Shown piece by piece: positions 1 through 64,000 of a stretch of 64,000 bases of DNA (positions are counted from its first letter, which is position 1; each line of letters starts with the position of its first letter). Origin of the DNA: Caecitellus pseudoparvulus (taxonomy: Eukaryota > Protista > Bigyra: Bicosoecida); assembly GCA_965644315.1 (NCBI GenBank), contig CBFFRQ010000214.1, positions 1-64,000 of the forward strand, read 5' to 3'. The notes under the pieces were generated by a model. It was given only the letters and a program-made list of their open reading frames with translations, was not told the DNA's origin and ran no database searches. Made by a program: the position numbers and the translations under genes.

Positions 1-3000
1 CCCGTGGCCATGTGCAGGTACCCGGCGTCGCCCGTGAGCGCGGTGCCAGTGCTCAGCACCATGGCGCCGCTGTCGCCCGATGTCGACCCGCCCGACGCCA
101 GTGTGACGGCCCCGCTGCTGCCCGACTGTGTCGTGCCAGTGCTCAGCACCATGGCGCCGCTGTCGCCCGATGTCGACCCGCCCGACGCCAGTGTCACGGC
201 CCCGCTGCTGCCCGACTGTGTCGTGCCAGTGCTCAGCACCAGCGACCCCGACACACCCGTGCCCACAGCGTTGGCACTGCGCACCACCACTGCACCAGTG
301 CTGGACACCGCACCACTCCCGCTCACCACACTCACCACACCGCCCACACTGCCACCAGCAGTGCTGGCGCCAGCTGACACGTACAGGTGCCCGCCGTCGC
401 CCTGGTCAGTGCCGCCCACAGTCATGGACATGCTGCCGGCGACCCCCGATGTGGCGGCCCCCGTGGCCATGTGCAGGTACCCGGCGTCGCCCGTGAGCGC
501 GGTGCCAGTGCTCAGCACCATGGCGCCGCTGTCGCCCGATGTCGACCCGCCCGACGCCAGTGTGCACGGCCCCGCTGCTGCCCGACTGTGTCGTGCCAGT
601 GCTCAGCACCAGCGACCCCGACACACCCGTGCCCACAGCGTTGGCACTGCGCACCACCACTGCACCAGTGCTGGACACCGCACCACTCCCGCTCACCACA
701 CTCACCACACCGCCCACACTGCCACCAGCAGTGCTGGCGCCAGCTGACACGTACAGGTGCCCGCCGTCGCCCTGGTCAGTGCCGCCCACAGTCATGGACA
801 TGCTGCCGGCGACCCCCGATGTGGCGGCCCCCGTGGCCATGTGCAGGTACCCGGCGTCGCCCGTGAGCGCGGTGCCAGTGCTCAGCACCATGGCGCCGCT
901 GTCGCCCGATGTCGACCCGCCCGACGCCAGTGTGACGGCCCCGCTGCTGCCCGACTGTGTCGTGCCAGTGCTCAGCACCATGGCGCCGCTGTCGCCCGAT
1001 GTCGACCCGCCCGACGCCAGTGTCACGGCCCCGCTGCTGCCCGACTGTGTCGTGCCAGTGCTCAGCACCAGCGACCCCGACACACCCGTGCCCACAGCGT
1101 TGGCACTGCGCACCACCACTGCACCAGTGCTGGACACCGCACCACTCCCGCTCACCACACTCACCACACCGCCCACACTGCCACCAGCAGTGCTGGCGCC
1201 AGCTGACACGTACAGGTGCCCGCCGTCGCCCTGGTCAGTGGCGCCCACAGTCATGGACATGCTGCCGGCGGCCCCCGATGTGGCGGCCCCCGTGGCCATG
1301 TGCAGGTACCCGGCGTCGCCCGTGAGCGCGGTGCCAGTGCTCAGCACCATGGCGCCGCTGTCGCCCGATGTCGACCCGCCCGACGCCAGTGTGACGGCCC
1401 CGCTGCTGCCCGACTGTGTCGTGCCAGTGCTCAGCACCATGGCGCCGCTGTCGCCCGATGTCGACCCGCCCGACGCCAGTGTCACGGCCCCGCTGCTGCC
1501 CGACTGTGTCGTGCCAGTGCTCAGCACCAGCGACCCCGACACGCCCGTGCCCACAGCGTTGGCACTGCGCACCACCACTGCACCAGTGCTGGACACCGCA
1601 CCACTCCCGCTCACCACACTCACCACACCGCCCACACTGCCACCAGCAGTGCTGGCGCCAGCTGACACGTACAGGTGCCCGCCGTCGCCCTGGTCAGTGC
1701 CGCCCACAGTCATGGACATGCTGCCGGCGGCCCCCGATGTGGCGGCCCCCGTGGCCATGTGCAGGTACCCGGCGTCGCCCGTGAGCGCGGTGCCAGTGCT
1801 CAGCACCATGGCGCCGCTGTCGCCCGATGTCGACCCGCCCGACGCCAGTGTCACGGCCCCGCTGCTGCCCGACTGTGTCGTGCCAGTGCTCAGCACCATG
1901 GCGCCGCTGTCGCCCGATGTCGACCCGCCCGACGCCAGTGTCACGGCCCCGCTGCTGCCCGACTGTGTCGTGCCAGTGCTCAGCACCAGCGACCCCGACA
2001 CACCCGTGCCCACAGCGTTGGCACTGCGCACCACCACTGCACCAGTGCTGGACACCGCACCACTCCCGCTCACCACACTCACCACACCGCCCACACTGCC
2101 ACCAGCAGTGCTGGCGCCAGCTGACACGTACAGGTGCCCGCCGTCGCCCTGGTCAGTGCCGCCCACAGTCATGGACATGCTGCCGGCGGCCCCCGATGTG
2201 GCGGCCCCCGTGGCCATGTGCAGGTACCCGGCGTCGCCCGTGAGCGCGGTGCCAGTGCTCAGCACCATGGCGCCGCTGTCGCCCGATGTCGACCCGCCCG
2301 ACGCCAGTGTCACGGCCCCGCTGCTGCCCGACTGTGTCGTGCCAGTGCTCAGCACCATGGCGCCGCTGTCGCCCGATGTCGACCCGCCCGACGCCAGTGT
2401 CACGGCCCCGCTGCTGCCCGACTGTGTCGTGCCAGTGCTCAGCACCAGCGACCCCGACACACCCGTGCCCACAGCGTTGGCACTGCGCACCACCACTGCA
2501 CCAGTGCTGGACACCGCACCACTCCCGCTCACCACACTCACCACACCGCCCACACTGCCACCAGCAGTGCTGGCGCCAGCTGACACGTACAGGTGCCCGC
2601 CGTCGCCCTGGTCAGTGGCGCCCACAGTCATGGACATGCTGCCGGCGGCCCCCGATGTGGCGGCCCCCGTGGCCATGTGCAGGTACCCGGCGTCGCCCGT
2701 GAGCGCGGTGCCAGTGCTCAGCACCATGGCGCCGCTGTCGCCCGATGTCGACCCGCCCGACGCCAGTGTGACGGCCCCGCTGCTGCCCGACTGTGTCGTG
2801 CCAGTGCTCAGCACCATGGCGCCGCTGTCGCCCGATGTCGACCCGCCCGACGCCAGTGTCACGGCCCCGCTGCTGCCCGACTGTGTCGTGCCAGTGCTCA
2901 GCACCAGCGACCCCGACACACCCGTGCCCACAGCGTTGGCACTGCGCACCACCACTGCACCAGTGCTGGACACCGCACCACTCCCGCTCACCACACTCAC

Positions 3001-6000
3001 CACACCGCCCACACTGCCACCAGCAGTGCTGGCGCCAGCTGACACGTACACGTGCCCGCCGTCGCCCTGGTCAGTGGCGCCCACAGTCATGGACATGCTG
3101 CCGGCGACCCCCGATGTGGCGGCCCCCGTGGCCATGTGCAGGTACCCGGCGTCGCCCGTGAGCGCGGTGCCAGTGCTCAGCACCATGGCGCCGCTGTCGC
3201 CCGATGTCGACCCGCCCGACGCCAGTGTCACGGCCCCGCTGCTGCCCGACTGTGTCGTGCCAGTGCTCAGCACCATGGCGCCGCTGTCGCCCGATGTCGA
3301 CCCGCCCGACGCCAGTGTCACGGCCCCGCTGCTGCCCGACTGTGTCGTGCCAGTGCTCAGCACCAGCGACCCCGACACACCCGTGCCCACAGCGTTGGCA
3401 CTGCGCACCACCACTGCACCAGTGCTGGACACCGCACCACTCCCGCTCACCACACTCACCACACCGCCCACACTGCCACCAGCAGTGCTGGCGCCAGCTG
3501 ACACGTACAGGTGCCCGCCGTCGCCCTGGTCAGTGCCGCCCACAGTCATGGACATGCTGCCGGCGGCCCCCGATGTGGCGGCCCCCGTGGCCATGTGCAG
3601 GTACCCGGCGTCGCCCGTGAGCGCGGTGCCAGTGCTCAGCACCATGGCGCCGCTGTCGCCCGATGTCGACCCGCCCGACGCCAGTGTACGGCCCCGCTGC
3701 TGCCGACTGTGTCGTGCCAGTGCTCAGCACCATGGCGCCGCTGTCGCCCGATGTCGACCCGCCCGACGCCAGTGTCACGGCCCCGCTGCTGCCCGACTGT
3801 GTCGTGCCAGTGCTCAGCACCAGCGACCCCGACACACCCGTGCCCACAGCGTTGGCACTGCGCACCACCACTGCACCAGTGCTGGACACCGCACCACTCC
3901 CGCTCACCACACTCACCACACCGCCCACACTGCCACCAGCAGTGCTGGCGCCAGCTGACACGTACAGGTGCCCGCCGTCGCCCTGGTCAGTGCCGCCCAC
4001 AGTCATGGACATGCTGCCGGCGGCCCCCGATGTGGCGGCCCCCGTGGCCATGTGCAGGTACCCGGCGTCGCCCGTGAGCGCGGTGCCAGTGCTCAGCACC
4101 ATGGCGCCGCTGTCGCCCGATGTCGACCCGCCCGACGCCAGTGTCACGGCCCCGCTGCTGCCCGACTGTGTCGTGCCAGTGCTCAGCACCATGGCGCCGC
4201 TGTCGCCCGATGTCGACCCGCCCGACGCCAGTGTCACGGCCCCGCTGCTGCCCGACTGTGTCGTGCCAGTGCTCAGCACCAGCGACCCCGACACACCCGT
4301 GCCCACAGCGTTGGCACTGCGCACCACCACTGCACCAGTGCTGGACACCGCACCACTCCCGCTCACCACACTCACCACACCGCCCACACTGCCACCAGCA
4401 GTGCTGGCGCCAGCTGACACGTACAGGTGCCCGCCGTCGCCCTGGTCAGTGGCGCCCACAGTCATGGACATGCTGCCGGCGGCCCCCGATGTGGCGGCCC
4501 CCGTGGCCATGTGCAGGTACCCGGCGTCGCCCGTGAGCGCGGTGCCAGTGCTCAGCACCATGGCGCCGCTGTCGCCCGATGTCGACCCGCCCGACGCCAG
4601 TGTCACGGCCCCGCTGCTGCCCGACTGTGTCGTGCCAGTGCTCAGCACCATGGCGCCGCTGTCGCCCGATGTCGACCCGCCCGACGCCAGTGTCACGGCC
4701 CCGCTGCTGCCCGACTGTGTCGTGCCAGTGCTCAGCACCAGCGACCCCGACACACCCGTGCCCACAGCGTTGGCACTGCGCACCACCACTGCACCAGTGC
4801 TGGACACCGCACCACTCCCGCTCACCACACTCACCACACCGCCCACACTGCCACCAGCAGTGCTGGCGCCAGCTGACACGTACACGTGCCCGCCGTCGCC
4901 CTGGTCAGTGGCGCCCACAGTCATGGACATGCTGCCGGCGGCCCCCGATGTGGCGGCCCCCGTGGCCATGTGCAGGTACCCGGCGTCGCCCGTGAGCGCG
5001 GTGCCAGTGCTCAGCACCATGGCGCCGCTGTCGCCCGATGTCGACCCGCCCGACGCCAGTGTCACGGCCCCGCTGCTGCCCGACTGTGTCGTGCCAGTGC
5101 TCAGCACCATGGCGCCGCTGTCGCCCGATGTCGACCCGCCCGACGCCAGTGTCACGGCCCCGCTGCTGCCCGACTGTGTCGTGCCAGTGCTCAGCACCAG
5201 CGACCCCGACACACCCGTGCCCACAGCGTTGGCACTGCGCACCACCACTGCACCAGTGCTGGACACCGCACCACTCCCGCTCACCACACTCACCACACCG
5301 CCCACACTGCCACCAGCAGTGCTGGCGCCAGCTGACACGTACAGGTGCCCGCCGTCGCCCTGGTCAGTGGCGCCCACAGTCATGGACATGCTGCCGGCGG
5401 CCCCCGATGTGGCGGCCCCCGTGGCCATGTGCAGGTACCCGGCGTCGCCCGTGAGCGCGGTGCCAGTGCTCAGCACCATGGCGCCGCTGTCGCCCGATGT
5501 CGACCCGCCCGACGCCAGTGTCACGGCCCCGCTGCTGCCCGACTGTGTCGTGCCAGTGCTCAGCACCATGGCGCCGCTGTCGCCCGATGTCGACCCGCCC
5601 GACGCCAGTGTCACGGCCCCGCTGCTGCCCGACTGTGTCGTGCCAGTGCTCAGCACCAGCGACCCCGACACACCCGTGCCCACAGCGTTGGCACTGCGCA
5701 CCACCACTGCACCAGTGCTGGACACCGCACCACTCCCGCTCACCACACTCACCACACCGCCCACACTGCCACCAGCAGTGCTGGCGCCAGCTGACACGTA
5801 CAGGTGCCCGCCGTCGCCCTGGTCAGTGGCGCCCACAGTCATGGACATGCTGCCGGCGGCCCCCGATGTGGCGGCCCCCGTGGCCATGTGCAGGTACCCG
5901 GCGTCGCCCGTGAGCGCGGTGCCAGTGCTCAGCACCATGGCGCCGCTGTCGCCCGATGTCGACCCGCCCGACGCCAGTGTGACGGCCCCGCTGCTGCCCG

Positions 6001-48000: not shown

Positions 48001-51000
48001 TCCGCCATGCTCATCAGCACCATCTCCGCCAGACAGCTGCATCTCGCCACCTGCACCGAGTGATGCCGATCCAGCCAGCAGTGCGACACCCCCACCCTGC
48101 AGGGCCCCGCTCCCACTCTCCATCACGACGTCCCCGCCATGCTTGCCTCCGGCGACAGAGCCTGCCTTGATGGCCACTGAACCGCCAGATCCGCCCTCCA
48201 CGCTGCGGCCTGCGCTCACTGCCACTGGCCCAGCACCGTCACGCCCAGCGCCAGAGCCCAGCACCACAGACCCGGACGTCCCCAAACGAGAGGCACCACT
48301 CACCACAGACACGTTCCCAGACCCCAATGCCCCCATTCCACTGGAGAGGAACACGCCCCCACTGGAGCCCGACGATGCCTCACCACTGCCCACCTGAACG
48401 GACCCTGACGATGCACCGCCGGAGCCAGACACGACACTCAGCGTGCCAGATGCACCCTGGGCGCTGCGCCCACTTGCCAACATGAGAGCACCACCTGTCG
48501 CGTGGCCAGCTGCATGGCCGGCCGACACAGCCACTGAACCGCCTGCACCTGCCAGGCTGCCCCCACCAACCACCTGCACCTGGCCTGCATCACCGCTTGA
48601 ACTATCACCACTGCCCATGCGCACGCTACCACTCACACCCCGACTGGCAGCACTTGACACACTAACGGACCCACTGGCCCCCGCCTCGGATGGCCCCGTC
48701 GTGACGTGCACCTCACCACTTGACACAGGGCCCTGGCCCGACGCCACAGACACCCTGCCACCGGCACCAGATGCGCTGCTGCCCCCCAACACAGACACAC
48801 TGCCAGATTGGACACGTGCCAAGCCACTGCCCAGCTGCACTGCACCACTGGCACTGCCAGCGTCACCGCTCATGATGTGCACCGCGCCTGACTGGCCCCC
48901 TCTTGATGTGCCTGACTGCAGATGCAACTGACCGCTCGAGCCGCCCTCCACAGCGCCGCTGCTGACCTCCACACCACCGCTACCATGGCTGCCAGCTCCC
49001 CCCAGCACACTCACACCACCTCCTAGCCCTCCATGAGACCCACCAGCCTGCAGTACGACGGACCCCCTTCCCCACGGGCTGCAACACCAGCCTGCAGCAC
49101 CACGTCGCCACCCGGCCCAGACACTGCACCCCCAGCATGGCCCGTGATGTCCCCTGATGCCCCACTCGCGCTGCTGCCCGTCGACAACAGTATGCTGCCG
49201 CTGTCACCGTCGCTGCCTGACGAGCTCACACGCACGCCACCTGCGCCTGCATGCACGTCCACGGACCCACCAGCACCCGATGCGACAGACACGGTGCCAC
49301 CTTGCGAGCCCCCCCCCGCGGCCACAGTCACATTGCCCCCCGACACTGCACCTTTGCCTGTGCCGACAAACACGTCTCCAGACACGCCAGTCGCGCTGTC
49401 CCCACTGCGCAGAGACACAGACCCGGACGCCTCGCGGCCCTCTCCACTGCGCACTTCCACGCGCCCACCAGTACCTTGCATAGACTGTCCAGCATACATG
49501 AGCAAGTCTCCGCCCGCTTTGTGGGAGCTACCAACGCTTAAAAGGATCCCTCCGCTTTGATCGCCCGCTGAGGCCCCTGTTCGCATGGCGATGCTGCCGC
49601 TGCTGGAAGCATCTCCTGTGAGCACCTGAATGCTTCCCGACACAGCACCAGCCTTGCCTGTAGCAAGCCTGACTGATCCACTAGCGTGCTCAGACTGCTT
49701 CGAACTGACACTGATGTTTCCAGTCTGGCTCTCTGTGTTTGGAAGCATGGAGAACCGGCGGCTCCTGGCGTGCAGTGCTGCAAGCAAATCAATGGTGATC
49801 TTTGTCTTGTCAACTTCATGAAAGTTCTTCAAGCTGAAGTTCTTCTCAGGAAGACTCAACTCGGGGTACTCAGAAACGTACTCAGGCATGACCTCCTGGA
49901 CCTCTTGCGCAATGACACCTCGAGTCTCGATGTCTTTGATGCCACGAACGCGCTGCCACTCAGGTGTGTACTGATACTTGGTCACTCGCAGGCGCAGCAA
50001 GCGCTGGAGTACATCATCATCATCCACATCTTGGATGTCCGTTTTGATGCGGCGGTCAGAAGGAGAGTACACTTGCACGAGGTTGGCTGGAACATGAGAC
50101 ATGATGCGCTCCTTGCCCAAACGAAGAACAGTCCCACCCGTGACATTGGCACTTGAAATGCTGACATCGAATCCAGCCTGAGAGCTAAATGTAGATGAAG
50201 CGGCATGTGTTCTCAAAAGCCCAGAGGTGGATAGTGATGCTCCTAATTCAGACACAGATAGTACTGATGATTCGGACCGCGACTGGCTGCGCGCAACAAG
50301 CTGGACAGAACCACCAGGACCGTTAGACGAGACTGATATTCTCGAAGACTCTTGCCATGGTTCCCCTGCTGCAATGCTCACGTCGCCTCCACGCCCGACG
50401 CCGTCGCCAGCATGAAGCACCACGCTTCCACCATCATTGCCACGCCCAGCCACAAGTGCCAACTTGCTACCTACGCCCTCTGCCGTGGATGAGCTCAGCA
50501 GCTCAATCCCTGTGCCACTCTCATGCTCGCCAGATGCAGCTGCCACGACCACACCATGCCCTGCCAGGCCCAGCTGTGCTCCAGCAGTCACCGACACGCC
50601 ACCCGCGCCGCCGACTACCTGCACGCCCCCGCCTTCACCACTGCTTGACTCCCCACCAGCAATCAACACCGAACCGCTGCCCACAGCAGCACCACTGCCG
50701 CCCATCAAGCTCACAGACCCGCCCCGCCCACCTGCCGAGCTGCCACCCTGCAGAGTGACGTTGCCTGCATCCCCAGCCATGCCCACACCAGACGACACTG
50801 TCACAGACCCACTGCTGCCAGATGCCGACATGGAGCTGCCAAGCAGCAAGTCCCCACTCCGAACACCGCCAGCACCAGTCACAAGCTGCACCCGGCCACT
50901 CGCCTTCCCCCCTGCACCGGATGACACCATCACGGCGCCTCCACTCCCATCCCGACTCATGCCGGCGTGCCATGTGATGGACCCACCCTGCTCCCCCGTG

Positions 51001-54000
51001 CCACCTGCCACAGACACGCTGCCTCCCCGGCTGTCACGCTCAGCCCCGCCGACCAGCCCAGCACGCACCTGCACGTTGCCATGCAGACCCTTGCCGTCAC
51101 CAGCCAGCAAGGAGACATTGCCACTCTCTGTGTGCCCTCTGCCCCCTTGCAGCAACAGTGCCCCGCCAACACCTTCGCTGCTGGAGCCGGCCGCCACAGT
51201 CACGTTGCCACCGACTGCCTTGCCATGGCCAGCCTGCATGGTCAATGAGCCGCCACCACCACCTCGCAAGCCGCCGCTCGCACCCGCTGCAATGACCACA
51301 TCACCCCCACCAATGCGCACACCAGCAGTGCCAGGTGTAGAGCCACCGCCCACTTCCACCGCAATGCTGCCGCTGACGTCGCCGTCCCCGCTCGACATGT
51401 GCACATGGCCACCTTCTCCGCTCAACACTGCTGATGACCCCCCTCGCAAGGTGACACCACCAGAGGATCGGGCCACCAATGACACACCACCCCCGCCCTG
51501 GCCACCGCTCCCGCCTTGCACGGAAACGTTGCCAGCCACGCCAGCAGCAGCGTCCCCGCTCGCCAGCACCACGTCACCCGCAGGCCCATCTGATGCTTGG
51601 CCCGTTCGCAGCACCACAGACCCTGAGCGCTGGCCCTCCCCGCTGCTGACCAGCACAGAGCCACTGGTGTCTCCGGCCCCACTCCTCACGCTGACGCCTC
51701 CCCCAGTCCCAGCGGTGGCGCTTCCAGCTAGAATGCGAGCATGGCCACCCTGCTTTGTGGCATTACCGGCCACCATTTCAAGCTGACCTGACTGCTGTCC
51801 GCTCCCAGTCACTACGCTGACACTGCCACTATTTGAAGCACGTCCAGACGCCACTTGGATGCTTCCAGATGTGCGCCTAGCCGAGCCCGTCGTAAGCGCC
51901 ACAGAGCCACTGGTGTCCTCTGCACTCAGTCCACTACTGAGCGCTGCAGAGCCGCTCCGGCGCACTGCTTTCCCGCTGTGAAGCTTCACAGGCCCACTCT
52001 CTGCCCCTGGCCCACTTCTGAAGCTAGCCTTACCGGAAGTTCCCATGTCTGATCTGCCAGATTTGAGCAGCACGGTACCTGACTTGACACTGCTGCGCCC
52101 AGTCGACCCATGCAAGTCACCTGAACGGGCAGCCCCGGAGCCTGTAGACACAGCAATCGCACCTGACTCGGCACCATGCCCAGACACGATCTCAACCTTA
52201 CCACTCTCTGATGCTGCGTCACCAGAAGACAGGCTCACTCGGCCGCTGGCCCCGTGACTGCTTGCACCAGTTGCCAGCGATACTTCACCACTCCGGGCCC
52301 CGTCACCTGACTGGATCTCAACACTCCCAGACTCAAACTCTGCAGCATCAGGGGCAGCCCCACCTGATCCCACAGAAACACCACCTGATGAAGCAGACGT
52401 GCTTCCGGACCTAAGCATCACTGAGCCTGACTTCTCAAGGCCGCGGGTAGCGAGCAGAGTACCTCCACTCCCGCTGGAGACCGCGACGCCGCCAGCTCTG
52501 TCAGCGGAGATCTCCACCTTTCCGTGGCTAGCATCAGACCCTTCTGCCACGATTTTCACTTGCCCTCCAGACTCTGCTGAACCTGTAGCCATCAATTGTA
52601 CGGTCCCAGCTGATGAGCTGCCACCAGTCCCCACCAATATTCTCCCTGCATGGTTGCTCGCGATACCGTCACCCGCGGACAGACGGATATCCCCAGCATC
52701 AGTTGCAGCCCCTGTCACAACCGAAATTCCACCGGAACTTCCATCAGAGGCCGCCGTGTGCACGTCCACACTCCCTGAGCCCAGCGCTCCGGCACCAGAC
52801 CGTAGCACAATACCCCCCCCTGACTTCCTGTCGCTGCCGCTGCCGCCCTGCAGAGTCATATTACCGCCTGGCCCCGCCTGGCCTGAACCAGCCAGCACAG
52901 TCACACTGCCTCCTGACCCCAATGCATCTGCGCTGGCCCCACCCTGCAGAAGAACTGACCCACCACGCTGGCTCCCAGACCCACCAGCAACACGAGCTGC
53001 ACCTCCCTGGAGCCCATTCCCAGCTTCCACAGCGACAGAACCACCTGATCCACCCACACCAGAGCCTGCTGCGATGCTCATCGCTCCACCTTGCACCTCG
53101 CTGTGCCCTGCTTCCAATGACACGGTGCCCCCTGAGCCCTCTTCACTTGGCCCTGCGATCACTGAAATGCCACCGCTTCCAGCGCTGCCGGCGCCTGTTC
53201 CAATGGTCACATGCCCAGACACAGCCGCAGCAGAATCACCCGTGGTGATGCTGATGGGCCCACTGCTGCGTGTGCTTACTGCACCTGTGGAGACGTACAT
53301 GCCACCACTGGGCCCGCTCGAGCTGCTACCGCTGCCCACCACCACCTCACCGCCTTCACCTGCCTCTGACACGCCAGCTCGCATGGTGAGCACCCCGCCG
53401 CGCGCGCCTGCACCGGCTCGCAAAGTCACGTTCCCGCCGATCATGCCGCCCTCGCCAGCTGCCACCCGCACATTCCCAGCCTGCTCTGAGCCCGAACCAG
53501 CCAACACACTGGAGTCGCCACCAGTGCTTGCAGTGCTCTGGCCCCCCACCACTTGCACACTTCCCCCCATGCCCTCCCCTGCACCAGCGGACACGGCCAC
53601 CGCTCCACCAGTTCGGCCTTGCCCACCACTCACAGATGCTTGGGCCGTGTGTGCTACAAGGCGCACGTCACCACCTGCCTGGGCGCCCAGGCCAGCTTCA
53701 ATGCGCACAGCGCCTCCACCCCCTGTGCTGCGCCCCACCGACACAGTCACATTCCCACTTGCTCCTTGAGCTGCATCCCCAGACATCAGAGCCATGGAGC
53801 CACTGCTGCCCGCAGATGCCAACCCAGTCTCAATGGTCACGTTGCCTGAAGTGAGACCGGGGCCACTGCGCAGCGTCAGGCTCCCCCCTGAGTGCCCGTG
53901 CCCACCCACGATCTGCACGTCACCCCCAGCGCCCTGCCCATCACCTGCACTGGCAATGACAGAGCCACCGACCGAGCCAGATCCTGCCAACAAGCTAGCG

Positions 54001-57000
54001 CCTCCGCCATGCTCATCAGCACCATCTCCGCCAGACAGCTGCATCTCGCCACCTGCACCGAGTGATGCCGATCCAGCCAGCAGTGCGACACCCCCACCCT
54101 GCAGGGCCCCGCTCCCACTCTCCATCACGACGTCCCCGCCATGCTTGCCTCCGGCGACAGAGCCTGCCTTGATGGCCACTGAACCGCCAGATCCGCCCTC
54201 CACGCTGCGGCCTGCGCTCACTGCCACTGGCCCAGCACCGTCACGCCCAGCGCCAGAGCCCAGCACCACAGACCCGGACGTCCCCAAACGAGAGGCACCA
54301 CTCACCACAGACACGTTCCCAGACCCCAATGCCCCCATTCCACTGGAGAGGAACACGCCCCCACTGGAGCCCGACGATGCCTCACCACTGCCCACCTGAA
54401 CGGACCCTGACGATGCACCGCCGGAGCCAGACACGACACTCAGCGTGCCAGATGCACCCTGGGCGCTGCGCCCACTTGCCATCATGAGAGCACCACCTGT
54501 CGCGTGGCCAGCTGCATGGCCGGCCGACACAGCCACTGAACCGCCTGCACCTGCCAGGCTGCCCCCACCAACCACCTGCACCTGGCCTGCATCACCGCTT
54601 GAACTATCACCACTGCCCACGAGCACGCTACCACTCACGCCCCGACTGGCAGCACTTGACACACTAACGGACCCACTGGCCCCCGCCTCGGATGGCCCCG
54701 TCGTGACGTGCACCTCACCACTTGACACAGGGCCCTGGCCCGACGCCACAGACACCCTGCCACCGGCACCAGATGCGCTGCTGCCCCCCAACACAGACAC
54801 ACTGCCAGATTGGACACGTGCCAAGCCACTGCCCAGCTGCACTGCACCACTGGCACTGCCAGCGTCACCGCTCATGATGTGCACCGCGCCTGACTGACCC
54901 CCTCTTGATGTGCCTGACTGCAGATGCAACTGACCACTCGAGCCGCCCTCCACAGCGCCGCTGCTGACCTCCACACCACCGCTACCATGGCTGCCAGCTC
55001 CCCCCAGCACACTCACACCACCTCCTAGCCCTCCATGAGACCCACCAGCCTGCAGTACGACGGACCCCCCTTCCCCACGGGCTGCAACACCAGCCTGCAG
55101 CACCACGTCGCCACCCGGCCCAGACACTGCACCCCCAGCATGGCCCGTGATGTCCCCTGATGCCCCACTCGCGCTGCTGCCCGTCGACAACAGTATGCTG
55201 CCGCTGTCACCGTCGCTGCCTGACGAGCTCACACGCACGCCACCTGCGCCTGCATGCACGTCCACGGACCCACCAGCACCCGATGCGACAGACACGGTGC
55301 CGCCTTGCGAGCCCCCCCCCGCGGCCACAGTCACATTGCCCCCCGACACTGCACCTTTGCCTGTGCCGACAAACACGTCTCCAGACACGCCAGTCGCGCT
55401 GTCCCCACTGCGCAGAGACACAGACCCGGACGCTTCGCGGCCCTCTCCACTGCGCACTTCCACGCGCCCACCAGTACCACCAGCGCCCCCTCCGAGGAGG
55501 ACTGCACCGCCGGTCCCATTCACCGACACACCTGCCTGCACGACCACGGACCCGCCCTCTCCTGTCTCGGATGCACCGGCACTCACCCGCACTGAGCCAC
55601 TGGACCCCTGGCGTGCAGATCCGCTGCGCACCGTCACAGACCCAGTGTTCCCAGATACTGCCGCGCCGCTCTGCACCAGCACAGCACCACTTGATGTGCT
55701 GCCTGCTCCATCTTGACTCGACACACGCACGCTGCCTGAGGCGTGCGCGGACTCGGGGCCCTCGTAAAAGCGTTCTTGGCGCGCCTGCATCGCAGCCAGC
55801 ACGTCCACTGACAACGATGCGTAGTCAATGCCTGGCACAAGAGAACCGTTCAAGCCTGGTACCATGCGCACGTGCTCTGGAAGTGCTGCTTGCACATCCT
55901 CAGCCGACAGCACATGATCTGCACCTGGTCCACCCTGGCGTACCTTGAGCTGCATCAAGCGACCCAACACTTCCCGCTTCTCCTCTGCTGTCACAGTTGG
56001 CGCATCAGCGATGCCCGTCGGCACTCGCTGCAGTAGGCGCTTCACTGTCATGTCTCCCTGCACTGTCATGCCATCAGCAGTCAGCTTCAGAGCTGGTGCG
56101 CCGCCAACATTGACACTGACACCTTCACCCCCACTTTGCACAGTCAACGCACCGGTCGACTCCACACTCACGTTCCCTGCAGACTCCAGCGAAATGCCTG
56201 ACGCACTCAGTGCCACCGAGCTGCCCCCACCCACAACGGACACTTCATGCCCTTGCACAGCTACACCCCCTTGTGGACCCTCGCTTGATCTCCCTGCTGC
56301 AATGCTCACGTCGCCTCCACGCCCGACGCCGTCGCCAGCATGAAGCACCACGCTTCCACCATCATTGCCACGCCCAGCCACAAGTGCCAACTTGCTACCT
56401 ACGCCCTCTGCCGTGGATGAGCTCAGCAGCTCAATCCCTGTGCCACTCTCATGCTCGCCAGATGCAGCTGCCACGACCACACCATGCCCTGCCAGGCCCA
56501 GCTGTGCTCCAGCAGTCACCGACACGCCACCCGCGCCGCCGACTACCTGCACGCCCCCGCCTTCACCACTGCTTGACTCCCCACCAGCAATCAACACCGA
56601 ACCGCTGCCCACAGCAGCACCACTGCCGCCCATCAAGCTCACAGACCCGCCCCGCCCACCTGCCGAGCTGCCACCCTGCAGAGTGACGTTGCCTGCATCC
56701 CCAGCCATGCCCACACCAGACGACACTGTCACAGACCCACTGCTGCCAGATGCCGACATGGAGCTGCCAAGCAGCAAGTCCCCACTCCGAACACCGCCAG
56801 CACCAGTCACAAGCTGCACCCGGCCACTCGCCTTCCCCCCTGCACCGGATGACACCATCACGGCGCCTCCACTCCCATCCCGACTCATGCCGGCGTGCCA
56901 TGTGATGGACCCACCCTGCTCCCCCGTGCCACCTGCCACAGACACGCTGCCTCCCCGGCTGCCACGCTCAGCCCCGCCGACCAGCCCAGCACGCACCTGC

Positions 57001-60000
57001 ACGGTGCCATGCAGACCCTTGCCGTCACCAGCCAGCAAGGAGACATTGCCACTCTGTGTGTGCCCTCTGCCCCCTTGCAGCAACAGTGCCCCGCCAACAC
57101 CTTCGCTGCTGGAGCCGGCCGCCACAGTCACGTTGCCACCGACTGCCTTGCCATGGCCAGCCTGCATGGTCAATGAGCCGCCACCACCACCTCGCAAGCC
57201 GCCGCTCGCACCCGCTGCAATGACCACATCACCCCCACCAATGCGCACACCAGCAGTGCCAGGTGTAGAGCCACCGCCCACTTCCACCGCAATGCTGCCG
57301 CTGACGTCGCCGTCCCCGCTCGACATGTGCACATGGCCACCCTCTCCGCTCAACACTGCTGATGACCCCCCTCGCAAGGTGACACCACCAGAGGATCGGG
57401 CCACCAATGACACACCACCCCCGCCCTGGCCACCGCTCCCGCCTTGCACGGAAACGTTGCCAGCCACGCCAGCAGCAGCGTCCCCGCTCGCCAGCACCAC
57501 GTCACCCGCAGGCCCATCTGATGCTTGGCCCGTTCGCAGCACCACAGACCCTGAGCGCTGGCCCTCCCCGCTGCTGACCAGCACAGAGCCGCTGGTGTCC
57601 CCGGCCCCACTCCTCACGCTGACGCCTCCCCCAGTCCCAGCAGTTGCATCACCAGCGTGCAGCGAAATGGTTCCAGATCTCTGCTCGCCTTTTCCAGTTG
57701 ACAGTGAAAGATTTCCAGACTGTTGACCTTGACCGGTTTCTATTTTGACAAGGCCGGATGCTGCTCCTTTGCCTGTCTGCATCATGATGTCACCAGAGGT
57801 TTGATTCGAGTTACCGGTCCCAAGTGAAAGGTTTCCACTTCTGCGAATTCCAAAACCTGTGTGAACATTCATGTCACCACTTTCTATTCCCTCTCCTGTC
57901 AGAAGCAAAATTGCTCCTGTCTTTTCCCCTGCTGTTCCAGTCGCAACGTAGACCATGCCAGTTTCATACCCTTCCCCGGATTTAAGTGATACACCTCCAG
58001 AGGAACTGAGAGCACTGCCACTTGCGACAGAAACTGACCCCGACACAATGCTTTTACCTGAGGAGACTGAAACGTTTCCACTCCGAAGGCCGGCCGAGCC
58101 ACTTGACACTGCAATTGACCCTCCTTGATCTCCTCCATGACCTCCAGACACGAGAATATCTCCGGCAGACGATTCTCCATTCCCGGTCTTCAGTGTCAGA
58201 TCTCCACTTTGGGCCGCGTCTCCTGTCATTGCCATAATTGAGCCAGAATTCGCCTCTGCGTTCGCGGTTTGAAGAAGCACGCCGATGAAGTCTGCTGGAG
58301 ATGTACCACTTACAGACTTGAAGGCACCAGAAGTCATCTTTATACTATGACCCACAACTCTTATATCCGACATGTCGGCATAGGACCCAATGCTAACATT
58401 GCCACCGCTTTCACTACCAGCACCAGCGTGCAAAAGAACACTCCCACCTGATGTTCCTGAACCAGCCAAAATATGCACACCCCCGCCACTTTGTGTTGAG
58501 AAACCACTCTCAACGCGCACATCACCAGACTGCTCCACTGACGCACCTGACCCAAGAGTCACAGAGCCAGATGCACTGCTTGACTTCCCCGTCTGCAGCA
58601 GAATGTCACCTGAGCGTGCTTCCGCGTTCCCCGTCCCAAGCTTCAAGCTCCCTGACATTCCATCAGAGGCCGCCGTGTGCACGTCCACACTCCCTGAGCC
58701 CAGCGCTCCGGCACCAGACCGTAGCACAATACCCCCCCCTGACTTCCTGTCGCTGCCGCTGCCGCCCTGCAGAGTCATATTACCGCCTGGCCCCGCCTGG
58801 CCTGAACCAGCCAGCACAGTCACACTGCCTCCTGACCCCAATGCATCTGTGCTGGCCCCACCCTGCAGAAGAACTGACCCACCACGCTGGCTCCCAGACC
58901 CACCAGCAACACGAGCTGCACCTCCCTGGAGCCCATTCCCAGCTTCCACAGCGACAGAACCACCTGATCCACCCACACCAGAGCCTGCTGCGATGCTCAT
59001 CGCTCCACCTTGCACCTCGCTGTGCCCTGCTTCCAATGACACGGTGCCCCCTGAGCCCTCTTCACTTGGCCCTGCGATCAATGAAATGCCACCGCTTCCA
59101 GCGCTGCCGGCGCCTGTTCCAATGGTCACATGCCCAGACACAGCCGCAGCAGAATCACCCGTGGTGATGCTGATGGGCCCACTGCTGCGTGTGCTTACTG
59201 CACCTGTGGAGACGTACATGCCACCACTGGGCCCGCTCGAGCTGCTACCGCTGCCCACCACCACCTCACCGCCTTCACCTGCCTCTGACACGCCAGCTCG
59301 CATGGTGAGCACCCCGCCGCGCGCGCCTGCACCGGCTCGCAAAGTCACGTTCCCGCCGATCATGCCGCCCTCGCCAGCTGCCACCCGCACATTCCCAGCC
59401 TGCTCTGAGCCCGAACCAGCCAACACACTGGAGTCGCCACCAGTGCCTGCAGTGCTCTGGCCCCCCACCACTTGCACACTTCCCCCCATGCCCTCCCCTG
59501 CACCAGCGGACACGGCCACCGCTCCACCAGTTCGGCCTTGCCCACCACTCACAGATGCTTGGGCCGTGTGTGCTACAAGGCGCACGTCACCACCTGCCTG
59601 GGCGCCCAGGCCAGCTTCAATGCGCACAGCGCCTCCACCCCCTGTGCTGCGCCCCGCCGACACAGTCACATTCCCACTTGCTCCTTGAGCTGCATCCCCA
59701 GACATCAGAGCCATGGAGCCACTGCTGCCCGCAGATGCCAACCCAGTCTCAATGGTCACGTTGCCTGAAGTGAGACCGGGGCCACTGCGCAGCGTCAGGC
59801 TCCCCCCTGAGTGCCCGTGCCCACCCACGATCTGCACGTCACCCCCAGCGCCCTGCCCATCACCTGCACTGGCAATGACAGAGCCACCGACCGAGCCAGA
59901 TCCTGCCAACAAGCTAGCGCCTCCGCCATGCTCATCAGCACCATCTCCGCCAGACAGCTGCATCTCGCCACCTGCACCGAGTGATGCCGATCCAGCCAGC

Positions 60001-63000
60001 AGTGCGACACCCCCACCCTGCAGGGCCCCGCTCCCACTCTCCATCACGACGTCCCCGCCATGCTTGCCTCCGGCGACAGAGCCTGCCTTGATGGCCACTG
60101 AACCGCCAGATCCGCCCTCCACGCTGCGGCCTGCGCTCACTGCCACTGGCCCAGCACCGTCACGCCCAGCGCCAGAGCCCAGCACCACAGACCCGGACGT
60201 CCCCAAACGAGAGGCACCACTCACCACAGACACGTTCCCAGACCCCAATGCCCCCATTCCACTGGAGAGGAACACGCCCCCACTGGAGCCCGACGATGCC
60301 TCACCACTGCCCACCTGAACGGACCCTGACGATGCACCGCCGGAGCCAGACACGACACTCAGCGTGCCAGATGCACCCTGGGCGCTGCGCCCACTTGCCA
60401 ACATGAGAGCACCACCTGTCGCGTGGCCAGCTGCATGGCCGGCCGACACAGCCACTGAACCGCCTGCACCTGCCAGGCTGCCCCCACCAACCACCTGCAC
60501 CTGGCCTGCATCACCGCTTGAACTATCACCACTGCCCATGCGCACGCTACCACTCACACCCCGACTGGCAGCACTTGACACACTAACGGACCCACTGGCC
60601 CCCGCCTCGGATGGCCCCGTCGTGACGTGCACCTCACCACTTGACACAGGGCCCTGGCCCGACGCCACAGACACCCTGCCACCGGCACCAGATGCGCTGC
60701 TGCCCCCCAACACAGACACACTGCCAGACTGAACACGTGCCGAGCCACTGCCCAGCTGCACTGCACCACTGGCACTGCCAGCGTCACCGCTCATGATGTG
60801 CACCGCGCCTGACTGACCCCCTCTTGATGTGCCTGACTGCAGATGCAACTGACCGCTCGAGCCGCCCTCCACAGCGCCGCTGCTGACCTCCACACCACCG
60901 CTACCATGGCTGCCAGCTCCCCCCAGCACACTCACACCACCTCCTAGCCCTCCATGAGACCCACCAGCCTGCAGTACGACGGACCCCCCTTCCCCACGGG
61001 CTGCAACACCAGCCTGCAGCACCACGTCGCCACCCGGCCCAGACACTGCACCCCCAGCATGGCCCGTGATGTCCCCTGATGCCCCACTCGCGCTGCTGCC
61101 CGTCGACAACAGTATGCTGCCGCTGTCACCGTCGCTGCCTGACGAGCTCACACGCACGCCACCTGCGCCTGCATGCACGTCCACGGACCCACCAGCACCC
61201 GATGCGACAGACACGGTGCCACCTTGCGAGCCCCCCCCCGCGGCCACAGTCACATTGCCCCCCGACACTGCACCTTTGCCTGTGCCGACAAACACGTCTC
61301 CAGACACGCCAGTCGCGCTGTCCCCACTGCGCAGAGACACAGACCCGGACGCCTCGCGGCCCTCTCCACTGCGCACTTCCACGCGCCCACCAGTACCACC
61401 AGCGCCCCCTCCGAGGAGGACTGCACCGCCGGTCCCATTCACCGACACACCTGCCTGCACGACCACGGACCCGCCCTCTCCTGTCTCGGATGCACCGGCA
61501 CTCACCCGCACTGAGCCACTGGACCCCTGGCGTGCAGATCCGCTGCGCACCGTCACAGACCCAGTGTTCCCAGATACTGCCGCGCCGCTCTGCACCAGCA
61601 CAGCACCACTTGATGTGCTGCCTGCTCCATCTTGACTCGACACACGCACGCTGCCTGAGGCGTGCGCGGACTCGGGGCCCTCGTAAAAGCGTTCTTGGCG
61701 CGCCTGCATCGCAGCCAGCACGTCCACTGACAACGATGCGTAGTCAATGCCTGGCACAAGAGAACCGTTCAAGCCTGGTACCATGCGCACGTGCTCTGGA
61801 AGTGCTGCTTGCACATCCTCAGCCGACAGCACATGATCTGCACCTGGTCCACCCTGGCGTACCTTGAGCTGCATCAAGCGACCCAACACTTCCCGCTTCT
61901 CCTCTGCTGTCACAGTTGGCGCATCAGCGATGCCCGTCGGCACTCGCTGCAGTAGGCGCTTCACTGTCATGTCTCCCTGCACTGTCATGCCATCAGCAGT
62001 CAGCTTCAGAGCTGGTGCGCCGCCAACATTGACACTGACACCTTCACCCCCACTTTGCACAGTCAACGCACCGGTCGACTCCACACTCACGTTCCCTGCA
62101 GACTCCAGCGAAATGCCTGACGCACTCAGTGCCACCGAGCTGCCCCCACCCACAACGGACACTTCATGCCCTTGCACAGCTACACCCCCTTGTGGACCCT
62201 CGCTTGATCTCCCTGCTGCAATGCTCACGTCGCCTCCACGCCCGACGCCGTCGCCAGCATGAAGCACCACGCTTCCACCATCATTGCCACGCCCAGCCAC
62301 AAGTGCCAACTTGCTACCTACGCCCTCTGCCGTGGATGAGCTCAGCAGCTCAATCCCTGTGCCACTCTCATGCTCGCCAGATGCAGCTGCCACGACCACA
62401 CCATGCCCTGCCAGGCCCAGCTGTGCTCCAGCAGTCACCGACACGCCACCCGCGCCGCCGACTACCTGCACGCCCCCGCCTTCACCACTGCTTGACTCCC
62501 CACCAGCAATCAACACCGAACCGCTGCCCACAGCAGCACCACTGCCGCCCATCAAGCTCACAGACCCGCCCCGCCCACCTGCCGAGCTGCCACCCTGCAG
62601 AGTGACGTTGCCTGCATCCCCAGCCATGCCCACACCAGACGACACTGTCACAGACCCACTGCTGCCAGATGCCGACATGGAGCTGCCAAGCAGCAAGTCC
62701 CCACTCCGAACACCGCCAGCACCAGTCACAAGCTGCACCCGGCCACTCGCCTTCCCCCCTGCACCGGATGACACCATCACGGCGCCTCCACTCCCATCCC
62801 GACTCATGCCGGCGTGCCATGTGATGGACCCACCCTGCTCCCCCGTGCCACCTGCCACAGACACGCTGCCTCCCCGGCTGCCACGCTCAGCCCCGCCGAC
62901 CAGCCCAGCACGCACCTGCACGTTGCCATGCAGACCCTTGCCGTCACCAGCCAGCAAGGAGACATTGCCACTCTCTGTGTGCCCTCTGCCCCCTTGCAGC

Positions 63001-64000: not shown

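What the first reader, a model, noticed from the sequence alone, without database searches (positions are those of the whole stretch)
1..64000. One apparently intron-less reading frame of >21,000 codons, open at both ends
Seen: after correcting five single-base indels, the window is a single minus-strand frame with no start, stop, intron-like gap or intergenic DNA; 41.9 kb is stop-free even uncorrected. Inference: the full protein is in the size class of the largest known proteins and would be fragmented by normal annotation. At ~15 aa per strand and 0.48 nm per beta layer, this window alone gives ~1,400 strands. That is roughly 0.3-0.7 micrometre of fibre, depending on whether one or two strands per chain form each layer.
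Basis: partly seen in the sequence, partly recalled or inferred. Interest (0 to 1): 0.85.

Follow-up and report, generated by a model that had tools for sequence, protein, structure and literature searches.

The report
Giant fibre polyprotein with internal S74 chaperones
The whole 64-kb window is an internal piece of one enormous minus-strand gene for a serine/glycine-rich fibre protein, interrupted by phage-type self-cleaving chaperone domains, so it is probably a precursor cut into several very long fibres and not one 21,000-residue chain.

Summary
The minus strand is stop-free in five abutting frames: 4,991, 1,260, 14,013, 1,105 and 200 codons. They are separated by exactly five single-base length differences from paralogous repeat copies, at 49063, 45437, 3703, 3688 and 564. 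No start, stop or non-coding DNA is present.

The product is about 21,325 aa (1.93 MDa). It is built of about 1,300 fourteen-residue repeats (S-G-s-V-x-L-x-S-G-x-s-x-x-s) that match no Pfam, PHROG or PDB family.

Two are canonical Peptidase_S74 with an intact S-D-R-R-I-K motif (Ser at 50060 and 44182). Two are degenerate copies lacking Ser and Lys (about 61976 and 56057).

The nearest relatives, at 38-54% identity, are uncharacterised oomycete proteins and unnamed eukaryotic assemblies. These also carry several S74 domains inside one ORF.

About 55 of the 64 kb is recent amplification: four copies of a 6-kb module and about 78 units of 459 or 369 bp, all about 99% identical.

Most likely this is a secreted, trimeric fibre polyprotein that self-cleaves at the two active sites. 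The fold of the repeat, the cleavage, expression and the true array length remain untested.

The parts
1..64000 (-). One continuous coding frame, read as five abutting stop-free pieces (63998-49064, 49062-45438, 45436-3704, 3687-565, 563-1). No start codon context, stop or intergenic DNA. About 21,325 aa, 1.93 MDa.
49063..49063 (-). Single-base length difference (one base short, in a C-run on + strand) relative to 3 paralogous copies; frame switch 1.
   Evidence: searches show the paralogue reading through
45437..45437 (-). Single-base length difference (one base short, in a C-run) relative to 3 paralogous copies; frame switch 2.
3688..3703 (-). Two single-base length differences (3688 and 3703, each one base short) relative to 57 paralogous copies; together they make frame switch 3.
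564..564 (-). Single-base length difference (one base extra) relative to 16 paralogous copies; frame switch 4. TRF sees it as a 370-bp period instead of 369.
42738..64000 (-). Higher-order tandem repeat: about 3.6 modules of 5.88-6.00 kb (about 1,970 aa each), 99.1-99.8% identical. The copies are mosaic: two end in a degenerate ICD-like domain and two in a canonical one. GC3 0.58-0.61.
61655..61976 (-). Degenerate ICD-like domain 1. Its C-terminal half aligns with the canonical ICD (35% over 71 aa, in register). The Ser-Lys site is absent and there is no Pfam hit.
55736..56057 (-). Degenerate ICD-like domain 2, a copy of the above.
49721..50312 (-). Non-periodic neck plus canonical Peptidase_S74 domain 1. 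Pfam core is 50060-49875; the Ser of S-D-R-R-I-K is at 50060.
43843..44668 (-). A different non-periodic neck plus canonical Peptidase_S74 domain 2. Pfam core is 44182-43997; the Ser of S-D-R-R-I-K is at 44182. The modelled ICD fold matches MyRF ICA and phage K1F ICD.
34100..42737 (-). Non-repetitive (at DNA level) run of diverged 14-residue repeats: 2,877 codons, GC 54%, GC3 0.43, Ser 21%, Gly 19%. Non-periodic interruptions lie at 42103-41830, 40687-40399, 38587-38305 and 37309-36889.
1..34102 (-). Array of about 78 tandem units of 459 bp (153 aa, about 11 coils) or 369 bp (123 aa) in irregular order. Median identity to the consensus is 99.6%; GC 71%, GC3 0.81.
21698..22156 (-). Lone divergent unit in the array: 65% nt and 62% aa identity to the consensus, GC 56%, GC3 0.47. 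The differences are confined to its first 330 nt.

Best explanation
The window is an internal segment of one very large, uninterrupted gene of a eukaryote. The nearest named kin are oomycetes and the organism is unidentified. The gene encodes a secreted, probably N-glycosylated, Ser/Gly-rich fibrous protein made of about 1,300 fourteen-residue strand-turn repeats.

Phage-type intramolecular chaperone (S74/ICA) domains are embedded in the repeat tract, each preceded by a non-periodic neck. Inferred mechanism: three chains associate; each chaperone domain nucleates and proof-reads trimeric folding of the repeat tract on its N-terminal side. The two domains that keep the Ser-Lys dyad then cut the chain in front of their Ser, as in phage tailspikes and in MYRF, where the domain is also internal. 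The two Ser-less copies would act only as permanent registration knots.

The giant open frame would therefore be a polyprotein. It would yield at least three fibre segments with different C-terminal necks, the last of them over 14,700 residues.

Shown: the open frame, the repeat, the four domains, the intact motif, the modelled fold and the kinship. Inferred: trimer formation, cleavage, secretion and fibre geometry. The five frame breaks are most likely consensus errors in 99%-identical repeats. The extreme length comes from recent amplification of a 6-kb module and a 459-bp unit.
For: The frame is open with five indels only in near-identical repeats, two of them in homopolymer runs. There are zero stops in 2,877 non-repetitive codons against 128 expected. 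PF13884 scores 57.9 and 55.3 bits against a cut-off of 22. The S-D-R-R-I-K motif is intact and aligns to the MYRF cleavage motif. In the AlphaFold model the ICD part has pLDDT above 90. Its best PDB match is MyRF ICA 7dc3 (E 2e-7, TM 0.76, rmsd 2.3 A), followed by K1F 3gw6 and GA-1 3gud. BFVD matches are phage tail fibres with ICDs and a Bathycoccus virus S74 protein. PHROG tail-fibre families match the neck plus ICD. The degenerate copies are homologous to the canonical ones but lack Ser and Lys. Relatives matching across neck plus ICD (about 230 aa, 38-47% identity, E 1e-38 to 1e-54) come from Phytophthora infestans, P. sojae and Aphanomyces astaci, and the same repeats flank them. Unnamed eukaryotic assemblies carry 2-3 S74 domains in one ORF, only some with Ser. 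A relative's gene starts with a PSI-like cysteine motif and ends in a non-repeat domain of about 150 aa. N-x-S/T sequons are enriched: 48-61% of Asn against 22-27% expected, Fisher p 1.6e-4 and 5e-4. Array variants are biased to synonymous changes: 9 of 14 against 28.5% expected, p 0.006. The S74 domain's role as trimer quality control followed by self-cleavage at SDxxxK is described in PMC10769870.
Against: There is no expression, protein or read-level evidence. The AlphaFold monomer model of the repeat tract was unusable (pLDDT 57, no secondary structure), so the fold, the oligomeric state and the fibre length are not established. If any of the five indels is genuine, the first would end translation 12 codons further on, at 49025. 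The 34-kb array contains no chaperone domain, so it is unclear how more than 10,000 residues of near-identical repeats would find register. Differences between module copies show no significant synonymous excess (8 syn, 11 nonsyn, p 0.14). The PSI match in the relative is below Pfam's threshold (18.5 against 23.1 bits). Eukaryotic origin of the window itself rests only on homology. The array length could be an assembly product.
Confidence: 0.6

Rival explanations
1. The gene family is the same, but the frame breaks are genuine. On this reading the locus is a recently inactivated or truncated gene, or several shorter products, and most of the 64 kb is a decaying or freely expanding coding-derived satellite, not a translated giant protein.
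For: There are five frame-shifting indels in 64 kb. The arrays are 99% identical, so open frames there say little about selection. Module copies show no significant synonymous excess. The GC3 drift of the arrays (0.43 to 0.81) suggests that conversion dynamics dominate over codon-level selection.
Against: All five indels lie in near-identical repeats where consensus errors are expected, and two are in C-runs. No substitution anywhere creates a stop. The non-repetitive 8.6 kb downstream of the first two breaks is perfectly open (log10 P = -57). Array variants are biased to synonymous changes (p 0.006).
Confidence: 0.15
2. The gene is real, but its size is an assembly artefact. The 459-bp array and the 6-kb modules would have been over-expanded or mis-joined by the assembler, and polishing would have homogenised the copies.
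For: Copies are 99-100% identical over 34 kb and 21 kb. The indels are typical of long-read consensus. Relatives from other assemblies are only about 5,000 aa and have no DNA-level arrays.
Against: The irregular order of 153-aa and 123-aa units, a 154-aa unit, an embedded divergent unit and shared non-singleton variants are not what simple over-expansion produces. The modules are mosaic, with different necks and different ICD types. The relatives come from very fragmented assemblies, in which arrays would collapse or end contigs; L001's gene runs off its contig.
Confidence: 0.12
3. The sequence is not from a cellular eukaryote. It would be a giant adhesin gene of a GC-rich bacterium, or a fibre gene of a giant virus or an integrated viral element.
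For: The S74 domain is commonest in phage and bacterial fibres. Polinton-like viruses and a prasinovirus carry S74 fibre proteins (PMC12220804). The array has 71% GC. Bacterial proteins of up to 85,804 aa have been predicted (bioRxiv 10.1101/2023.11.21.568195).
Against: Bacterial, archaeal and viral collections match only the S74 core of about 65-130 aa at 31-52% identity. Matches across the whole neck plus ICD, and to the repeats, are oomycete or eukaryotic. The sequon enrichment fits the eukaryotic secretory pathway. A 64-kb open frame exceeds whole PLV genomes (14-40 kb; PMC12220804). No other gene of any kind lies in the 64 kb.
Confidence: 0.07

Closest known systems
Phage tailspike and tail-fibre proteins with a C-terminal intramolecular chaperone domain (K1F endosialidase, T5 L-shaped fibre pb1, gp37-like fibres)
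   Same: The domain is Peptidase_S74 with the S-D-x-x-x-K motif. The predicted fold matches 3gw6 and 3gud. PHROG tail-fibre families match the neck plus ICD. The domain sits at the C-terminal end of a repetitive beta-rich tract.
   Different: Here the domain is internal and occurs four times in one frame, twice without the catalytic residues. It is followed by thousands more residues. The fibre repeat is a different 14-residue unit with no PHROG or Pfam match. The size is 20-fold larger or more. The context is not viral.
MYRF (myelin regulatory factor) ICA domain
   Same: It is the closest solved structure by sequence (7dc3, E 8e-13) and by fold (TM 0.76). It is a eukaryotic protein in which the domain is internal and, from established knowledge, still trimerises and self-cleaves.
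   Different: No Ndt80-type DNA-binding domain or any other Pfam domain is present in the window. The domain is flanked by fibre repeats on both sides. It occurs in multiple copies.
Uncharacterised oomycete 'Peptidase S74 domain-containing' proteins (P. infestans PITG_01491, P. sojae PHYSODRAFT_500080, A. astaci DYB28_000574) and unnamed assemblies GCA_024449685.1, GCA_024449835.1 and GCA_024449875.1
   Same: They share the neck plus ICD (38-47% identity over about 230 aa), the same G-x-h-x-h repeats on both sides, several ICDs per ORF with a mix of Ser-containing and Ser-less sites, and fragmentation by gene callers.
   Different: Database models are 300-1,800 aa fragments, and the one gene traced end to end is about 5,000 aa. 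ICD spacing is about 390 aa, against about 1,970 aa here. They have no DNA-level tandem arrays. I found no paper that describes them.
Bdellovibrio MAT (mosaic adhesive trimeric) fibres
   Same: They are a cellular, not viral, use of S74-chaperoned trimeric beta-helical surface fibres with variable tips (PMC10769870).
   Different: They are bacterial and about 1,000 aa, with a single terminal S74 domain and an unrelated repeat.
Giant proteins (titin; PKZILLA-1, 45,212 aa; bacterial giant proteins up to 85,804 aa)
   Same: The size class is similar: at least 21,325 aa with both ends missing (bioRxiv 10.1101/2024.01.29.577497 and 10.1101/2023.11.21.568195).
   Different: This one is not an enzyme assembly line or an Ig/Fn3 spring. 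It is a low-complexity fibre repeat, probably processed after translation, and most of its length is very recent amplification.

Membership tests
Peptidase_S74 / intramolecular chaperone auto-processing domain | Match to PF13884 above the gathering score | tested here: met
   57.9 and 55.3 bits against a cut-off of 22 for the copies at 50060 and 44182. The two copies at about 61976 and 56057 give no hit.
Peptidase_S74 / intramolecular chaperone auto-processing domain | Catalytic Ser-Lys dyad in S-D-x-x-x-K | tested here: met
   S-D-R-R-I-K is present in both canonical copies and aligns to the MYRF motif. It is absent from the two degenerate copies.
Peptidase_S74 / intramolecular chaperone auto-processing domain | ICD fold | tested here: met
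   The AlphaFold model has pLDDT above 90 over the ICD. Foldseek finds 7dc3 (E 2e-7, TM 0.76, rmsd 2.3 A), 3gw6 and 3gud.
Peptidase_S74 / intramolecular chaperone auto-processing domain | Position at the C-terminal end of the protein, released as a small fragment | tested here: not met
   Both canonical copies are followed in frame by about 1,830 and more than 14,500 further residues. MYRF is a known exception with an internal domain.
Peptidase_S74 / intramolecular chaperone auto-processing domain | Trimer-dependent autoproteolysis | not testable with these tools
   This needs expression of wild-type and Ser-to-Ala fragments, or proteomics.
Phage or viral fibre gene | Lies among virion or other viral genes; close viral relatives exist | tested here: not met
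   There is no other gene in the 64 kb. IMG/VR matches cover only the S74 core at 31-52% identity. L042 and L003 are ordinary 832-aa phage fibres.
MYRF-type transcription factor | Ndt80-like DNA-binding domain N-terminal to the ICA domain | tested here: not met
   Pfam finds only PF13884 in about 12,750 residues scanned on either side, out of about 21,300 in the window.
YadA-like 14-residue beta-roll head of trimeric autotransporters (a resemblance recalled from memory) | Match to the head-repeat families or to solved heads | tested here: not met
   There is no Pfam hit even at E 10. There is no PDB sequence hit by phmmer or by profile; only non-significant FwdC and spurious linker matches appeared.
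Oomycete-type multi-ICD fibre proteins (undescribed family) | Neck plus ICD homology, with G-x-h-x-h 14-residue repeats on both sides of the ICD | tested here: met
   E 1e-38 to 1e-87 over query residues of about 54-282. Repeats were counted in the relatives. Repeat-only matches were found to A. astaci and P. fragariae.
Proteins of more than 20,000 residues | One uninterrupted translated frame | tested here: inconclusive
   The frame is uninterrupted only if five single-base indels are errors. No reads, cDNA or peptides are available.

The most novel reading that the evidence does not exclude
A cellular eukaryote makes micrometre-scale extracellular filaments from a single gene of more than 64 kb. 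The product would be a trimeric beta-structured polyprotein of over 2 MDa per chain. Phage-derived chaperone domains would be re-used as internal, alternately cleaving and non-cleaving, registration points, so that one translation product is folded segment by segment and cut into fibres with different tips. It would be the largest known fibrous beta-protein and a new way of using the S74 domain. Candidate structures, which are pure speculation, include flagellar hair filaments and cyst or spore surface hairs of stramenopiles.
Probability: 0.3. Interest if true: 0.85.

Novelty: new variant of a known kind. Interest (0 to 1): 0.72.

Why it matters
If the frame is genuine, this is one of the longest coding sequences known, and both of its ends are still missing. 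It also exposes a family of eukaryotic surface-fibre genes that current annotation shreds into anonymous fragments, including in oomycete pathogens.

The repeated internal S74 domains, some active and some catalytically dead, pose a concrete and testable question: how can a very long homotrimeric repeat protein be kept in register and then cut to length? The phage and MYRF literature has not addressed this.

The GC3 gradient that follows copy number is also a clean natural example for studying conversion-driven base composition inside a coding array.

Tried and rejected
- AlphaFold on a 450-aa repeat segment, using an alignment of paralogous and orthologous segments, gave pLDDT 57 and no secondary structure. 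I did not use it and did not fold-search it.
- A PDB sequence search with a 1,000-aa repeat stretch found nothing. The profile search gave only a spurious nanobody-linker hit and non-significant FwdC beta-helix hits.
- Pfam at E 10 and PHROGs on repeat segments gave nothing.
- An exact look-up of the window's 1,197-aa ORF in the assembly collection found no record, so the source organism stays unknown.
- A search for giant kin of 2,745-8,734 aa found none.
- Metagenome, GTDB-genome and IMG/VR scans found only distant S74 cores.
- Literature searches on the oomycete proteins, on S74 in stramenopiles and on the assemblies' accessions found nothing.
- A possible link to the Phytophthora Lpv high-molecular-weight repeat glycoproteins could not be tested, because no Lpv sequence was at hand.
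- I rejected reading the frame switches as gene boundaries, because the paralogous copies read straight through the same sequence.
- I rejected the + strand open frames as genes.
- The five pieces were always searched apart, by reference.
- Nothing in the window was taken for human sequence.
Full report
**1. The observation**

The minus strand of the window is stop-free in five abutting stretches. They are 63998-49026 (4,991 codons), 49203-45424 (1,260), 45571-3533 (14,013 codons, 42.0 kb), 3723-409 (1,105) and 602-1 (200). Every switch of frame lies inside a repeat that has near-identical copies elsewhere in the window.

I aligned each switch region against those copies. This gives exactly five single-base length differences:
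- 49063 and 45437: each one base short, in a C-run on the + strand.
- 3703 and 3688: each one base short.
- 564: one base extra.

The paralogous copy reads straight through the same sequence in frame. The switches are therefore indels and not gene boundaries.

**2. Chance and coding strand**

In a repeat of 459 = 3 x 153 bp at 71% GC, any frame of the unit that lacks a stop stays open through the whole array. This explains the 6,079-codon open frame on the + strand. That frame is confined to the array, translates to a Pro-rich sequence without a family match, and is an antisense shadow.

The decisive stretch is the non-repetitive 34.1-42.7 kb part (GC 54%). The minus frame has no stop in 2,877 codons. 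The other five frames have 60-149, and 128 are expected (log10 P = -57). The longest open run in 200 shuffles was 231 codons. Domain and homologue matches are also all in this frame.

**3. Anatomy, from N to C (high to low coordinates)**

(a) 64000-42738 holds about 3.6 copies of a 5.88-6.00-kb module of about 1,970 aa. The copies are 99.1-99.8% identical but mosaic.

(b) 42737-34100 is a run of diverged repeats that is unique at the DNA level.

(c) 34102-1 holds about 78 tandem units of 153 aa or 123 aa in irregular order. Their median identity to the consensus is 99.6%.

Throughout, the protein is Ser/Gly-rich (Ser 21%, Gly 19% in the unique part). It is built of a 14-residue repeat, S-G-s-[VIL]-x-[LIV]-x-[SAT]-G-x-s-x-x-s. 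The autocorrelation peaks at 14 and 28, and motif spacing is most often 14. There are about 1,300 G-x-h-x-h motifs in all. In the window this amounts to 21,325 aa and 1.93 MDa.

The repeat matches nothing in Pfam (even at E 10), in PHROGs, or among PDB sequences.

**4.

Pfam finds Peptidase_S74, the intramolecular chaperone and auto-protease of phage tailspikes, twice inside the frame. The hits are at 50060-49875 (57.9 bits) and 44182-43997 (55.3 bits), against a cut-off of 22.

Both copies keep the motif S-D-R-R-I-K. It aligns with the cleavage motif of MYRF, which is the best PDB sequence match (7dc3, E 8e-13).

I built an AlphaFold model of the neck plus domain from a 74-sequence alignment. 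Its pLDDT is above 90 over the domain. It superposes on the MyRF ICA domain (E 2e-7, TM 0.76, rmsd 2.3 A). The next matches are the K1F endosialidase chaperone (3gw6) and GA-1 (3gud). In the viral structure library it matches phage tail fibres with this domain and a Bathycoccus virus S74 protein. PHROG tail-fibre families match the neck plus domain.

The two other modules carry a degenerate homologue at the equivalent place (about 61976-61655 and 56057-55736). Its C-terminal half aligns in register with the canonical domain (35% over 71 aa, E 7e-11). The Ser and Lys are gone, and Pfam no longer sees it.

Each domain is preceded by a non-periodic neck of about 100-200 aa. The necks of the two canonical copies differ from each other. 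The unique part contains four or five further non-periodic interruptions without a chaperone domain.

**5. Relatives**

An exhaustive HMMER search with neck plus domain finds 749 proteins, none above 54% identity.

Hits that match across the whole neck plus domain include named oomycete proteins: Phytophthora infestans PITG_01491, P. sojae PHYSODRAFT_500080 and Aphanomyces astaci DYB28_000574. The same repeats lie on both sides of the domain in these proteins. Other such hits are proteins from three unnamed, highly fragmented NCBI assemblies and metagenome fragments. The repeat tract alone finds A. astaci and P. fragariae fragments.

In the unnamed assemblies one uninterrupted ORF carries two or three S74 domains, and only some of them keep the Ser:
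- P0004: SSDKRIK, TADERIK, PDDTRIK.
- P0001: SSDRRIK, AADSRIK.

This is the same mixture of active and Ser-less copies as in the window.

Around these genes lie ordinary eukaryotic genes (HSP70, TTL, Zip, PUB). The fibre gene itself is called as a string of adjacent same-strand ORFs.

One relative, L002, can be traced end to end at about 5,000 aa. It starts with a PSI-like cysteine motif (Pfam PSI at 18.5 bits, below the 23.1 threshold). It ends in a non-repeat domain of about 150 aa followed by a stop. It has no DNA-level tandem arrays.

Bacterial and archaeal genomes, metagenomes and IMG/VR give only the domain core of about 65-130 aa, at 25-52% identity. The best of these are ordinary 832-aa phage fibres. 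No protein of 2,745-8,734 aa with this domain was found. No paper in the library describes the oomycete proteins.

**6. Further evidence on the nature of the product**

N-x-S/T sequons take 48-61% of all Asn, against 22-27% expected. Within the coil motif, Asn at the first variable position goes with Ser or Thr two residues on (Fisher p 1.6e-4 and 5e-4). This fits an N-glycosylated secretory protein, although a structural reason cannot be excluded.

Selection on the array is weakly visible. Among 51 homogeneous units, 9 of 14 distinct variants are synonymous, against 28.5% expected (p 0.006). Between two module copies the ratio is 8 to 11, which is not significant.

**7. How it most likely works**

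Shown: the frame, the repeat, the four domains, the intact motif in two of them, the modelled fold and the kinship.

From established knowledge: in phage tailspikes, in Bdellovibrio MAT fibres (PMC10769870) and in MYRF, the S74 domain enforces trimerisation of the beta-rich tract on its N-terminal side. It then cuts in front of its Ser. In MYRF the domain is internal, as it is here.

My inference is that the product is a homotrimeric fibre polyprotein. Each chaperone domain folds and registers the module before it. The two active copies sever the chain at 50060 and 44182, giving pieces of at least 4,646, about 1,960 and at least 14,700 residues with different C-terminal necks. The Ser-less copies remain as knots.

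The fibre length cannot be stated, because the AlphaFold monomer model of the repeat was unusable (pLDDT 57). From my own recollection of known folds:
- One 14-residue coil per 0.48 nm would give about 0.7 micrometre for the window.
- A phage-type triple beta-helix would give roughly 1.3-1.5 micrometres.
- An adenovirus-type triple beta-spiral would give about 2 micrometres.

An open problem is that the 34-kb array has no chaperone domain at all.

**8. Origin of the size**

About 55 of the 64 kb is recent amplification. GC3 rises with copy number: 0.43 in the unique part, 0.58-0.61 in the 6-kb modules and 0.81 in the 78-unit array.

One unit in the middle of the array (22156-21698) escaped homogenisation over its first 330 nt. 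It has GC3 of 0.47. Where it differs from the consensus, the consensus is G/C and the unit is A/T 89 times, against 18 times the other way. This looks like GC-biased conversion during array homogenisation.

**9. Rivals**

- Genuine frameshifts, meaning a recently broken gene. Five indels is many. However, all lie where consensus errors are expected, no substitution creates a stop, and the unique 8.6 kb downstream is intact.
- Assembly inflation of the arrays. This cannot be tested without reads. The irregular unit order, the embedded divergent unit and the mosaic modules argue against simple over-expansion.
- Bacterial or viral origin. Only the domain core matches those collections, and a 64-kb frame exceeds whole polinton-like virus genomes (PMC12220804).

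**10. Verdict**

This is a new, very large and multi-chaperone variant of the known S74-chaperoned fibre. It belongs to an undescribed eukaryotic family, and it is most probably a polyprotein and not a single giant fibre.

Noticed in passing
window 1-64000 (unique 34100-42730; modules 42731-63998; array 3533-34099): Third-position GC rises with repeat copy number inside one gene: 0.43 in the unique part, 0.58-0.61 in the four 6-kb modules and 0.81 in the array of about 78 units. This suggests GC-biased conversion during homogenisation.
   Followed up: partly
window 21698-22156: A single divergent unit sits in the otherwise 99.6%-identical array. It has 65% nt and 62% aa identity to the consensus, and GC3 of 0.47. 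Differences are confined to its first 330 nt. The consensus is G/C where the unit is A/T 89 times, against 18 times the reverse.
   Followed up: partly
window 43870-43890 and 49750-49770 (approx.), just after each canonical S74 domain: A dibasic R-S-R-R motif directly follows the chaperone domain (…HARSRRFSM…). P. sojae and one metagenome relative have K-R there, and other relatives have neither. It could be a second, kexin-type processing site, but it is not conserved.
   Followed up: no
window 44350-44668 versus 50312-50100: The necks in front of the two otherwise identical canonical S74 domains are unrelated in sequence. If cleavage occurs, the released fibres would carry different C-terminal tips.
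   Followed up: partly
window 42103-41830, 40687-40399, 38587-38305, 37309-36889: Non-periodic, neck-like interruptions of about 90-250 aa occur every 470-700 residues in the unique part, without a chaperone domain. That spacing is close to the module size of the relatives. They may be vestiges of lost module boundaries.
   Followed up: no
window 3621-34190, + strand: Open frames of 6,079, 2,389 and 1,720 codons lie on the opposite strand. They are confined to the array, are Pro-rich and have no valid family match. They are antisense shadows that a gene caller could mistake for genes.
   Followed up: yes
L002:2403-18195 (GCA_024449835.1) and L001:5197-18413 (GCA_024449685.1): The relatives' genes start with a PSI-like Cys motif (CDQYKDCNICAQDDNCAWC…; Pfam PSI below threshold). 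In L002 the gene ends in a non-repeat domain of about 150 aa before the stop. They have no DNA tandem arrays. The organisms behind these assemblies could not be named.
   Followed up: partly
P0004, P0001, L002 ORFs (relatives): Where several S74 domains share one ORF, the first keeps the Ser of S-D-x-x-x-K and later ones often have Ala or Asp instead. A mix of cleaving and non-cleaving chaperone domains is therefore a family trait.
   Followed up: partly
window, all minus-strand pieces: Asn is found in N-x-S/T sequons about twice as often as composition predicts, and it co-varies with Ser or Thr inside the coil motif.
   Followed up: partly
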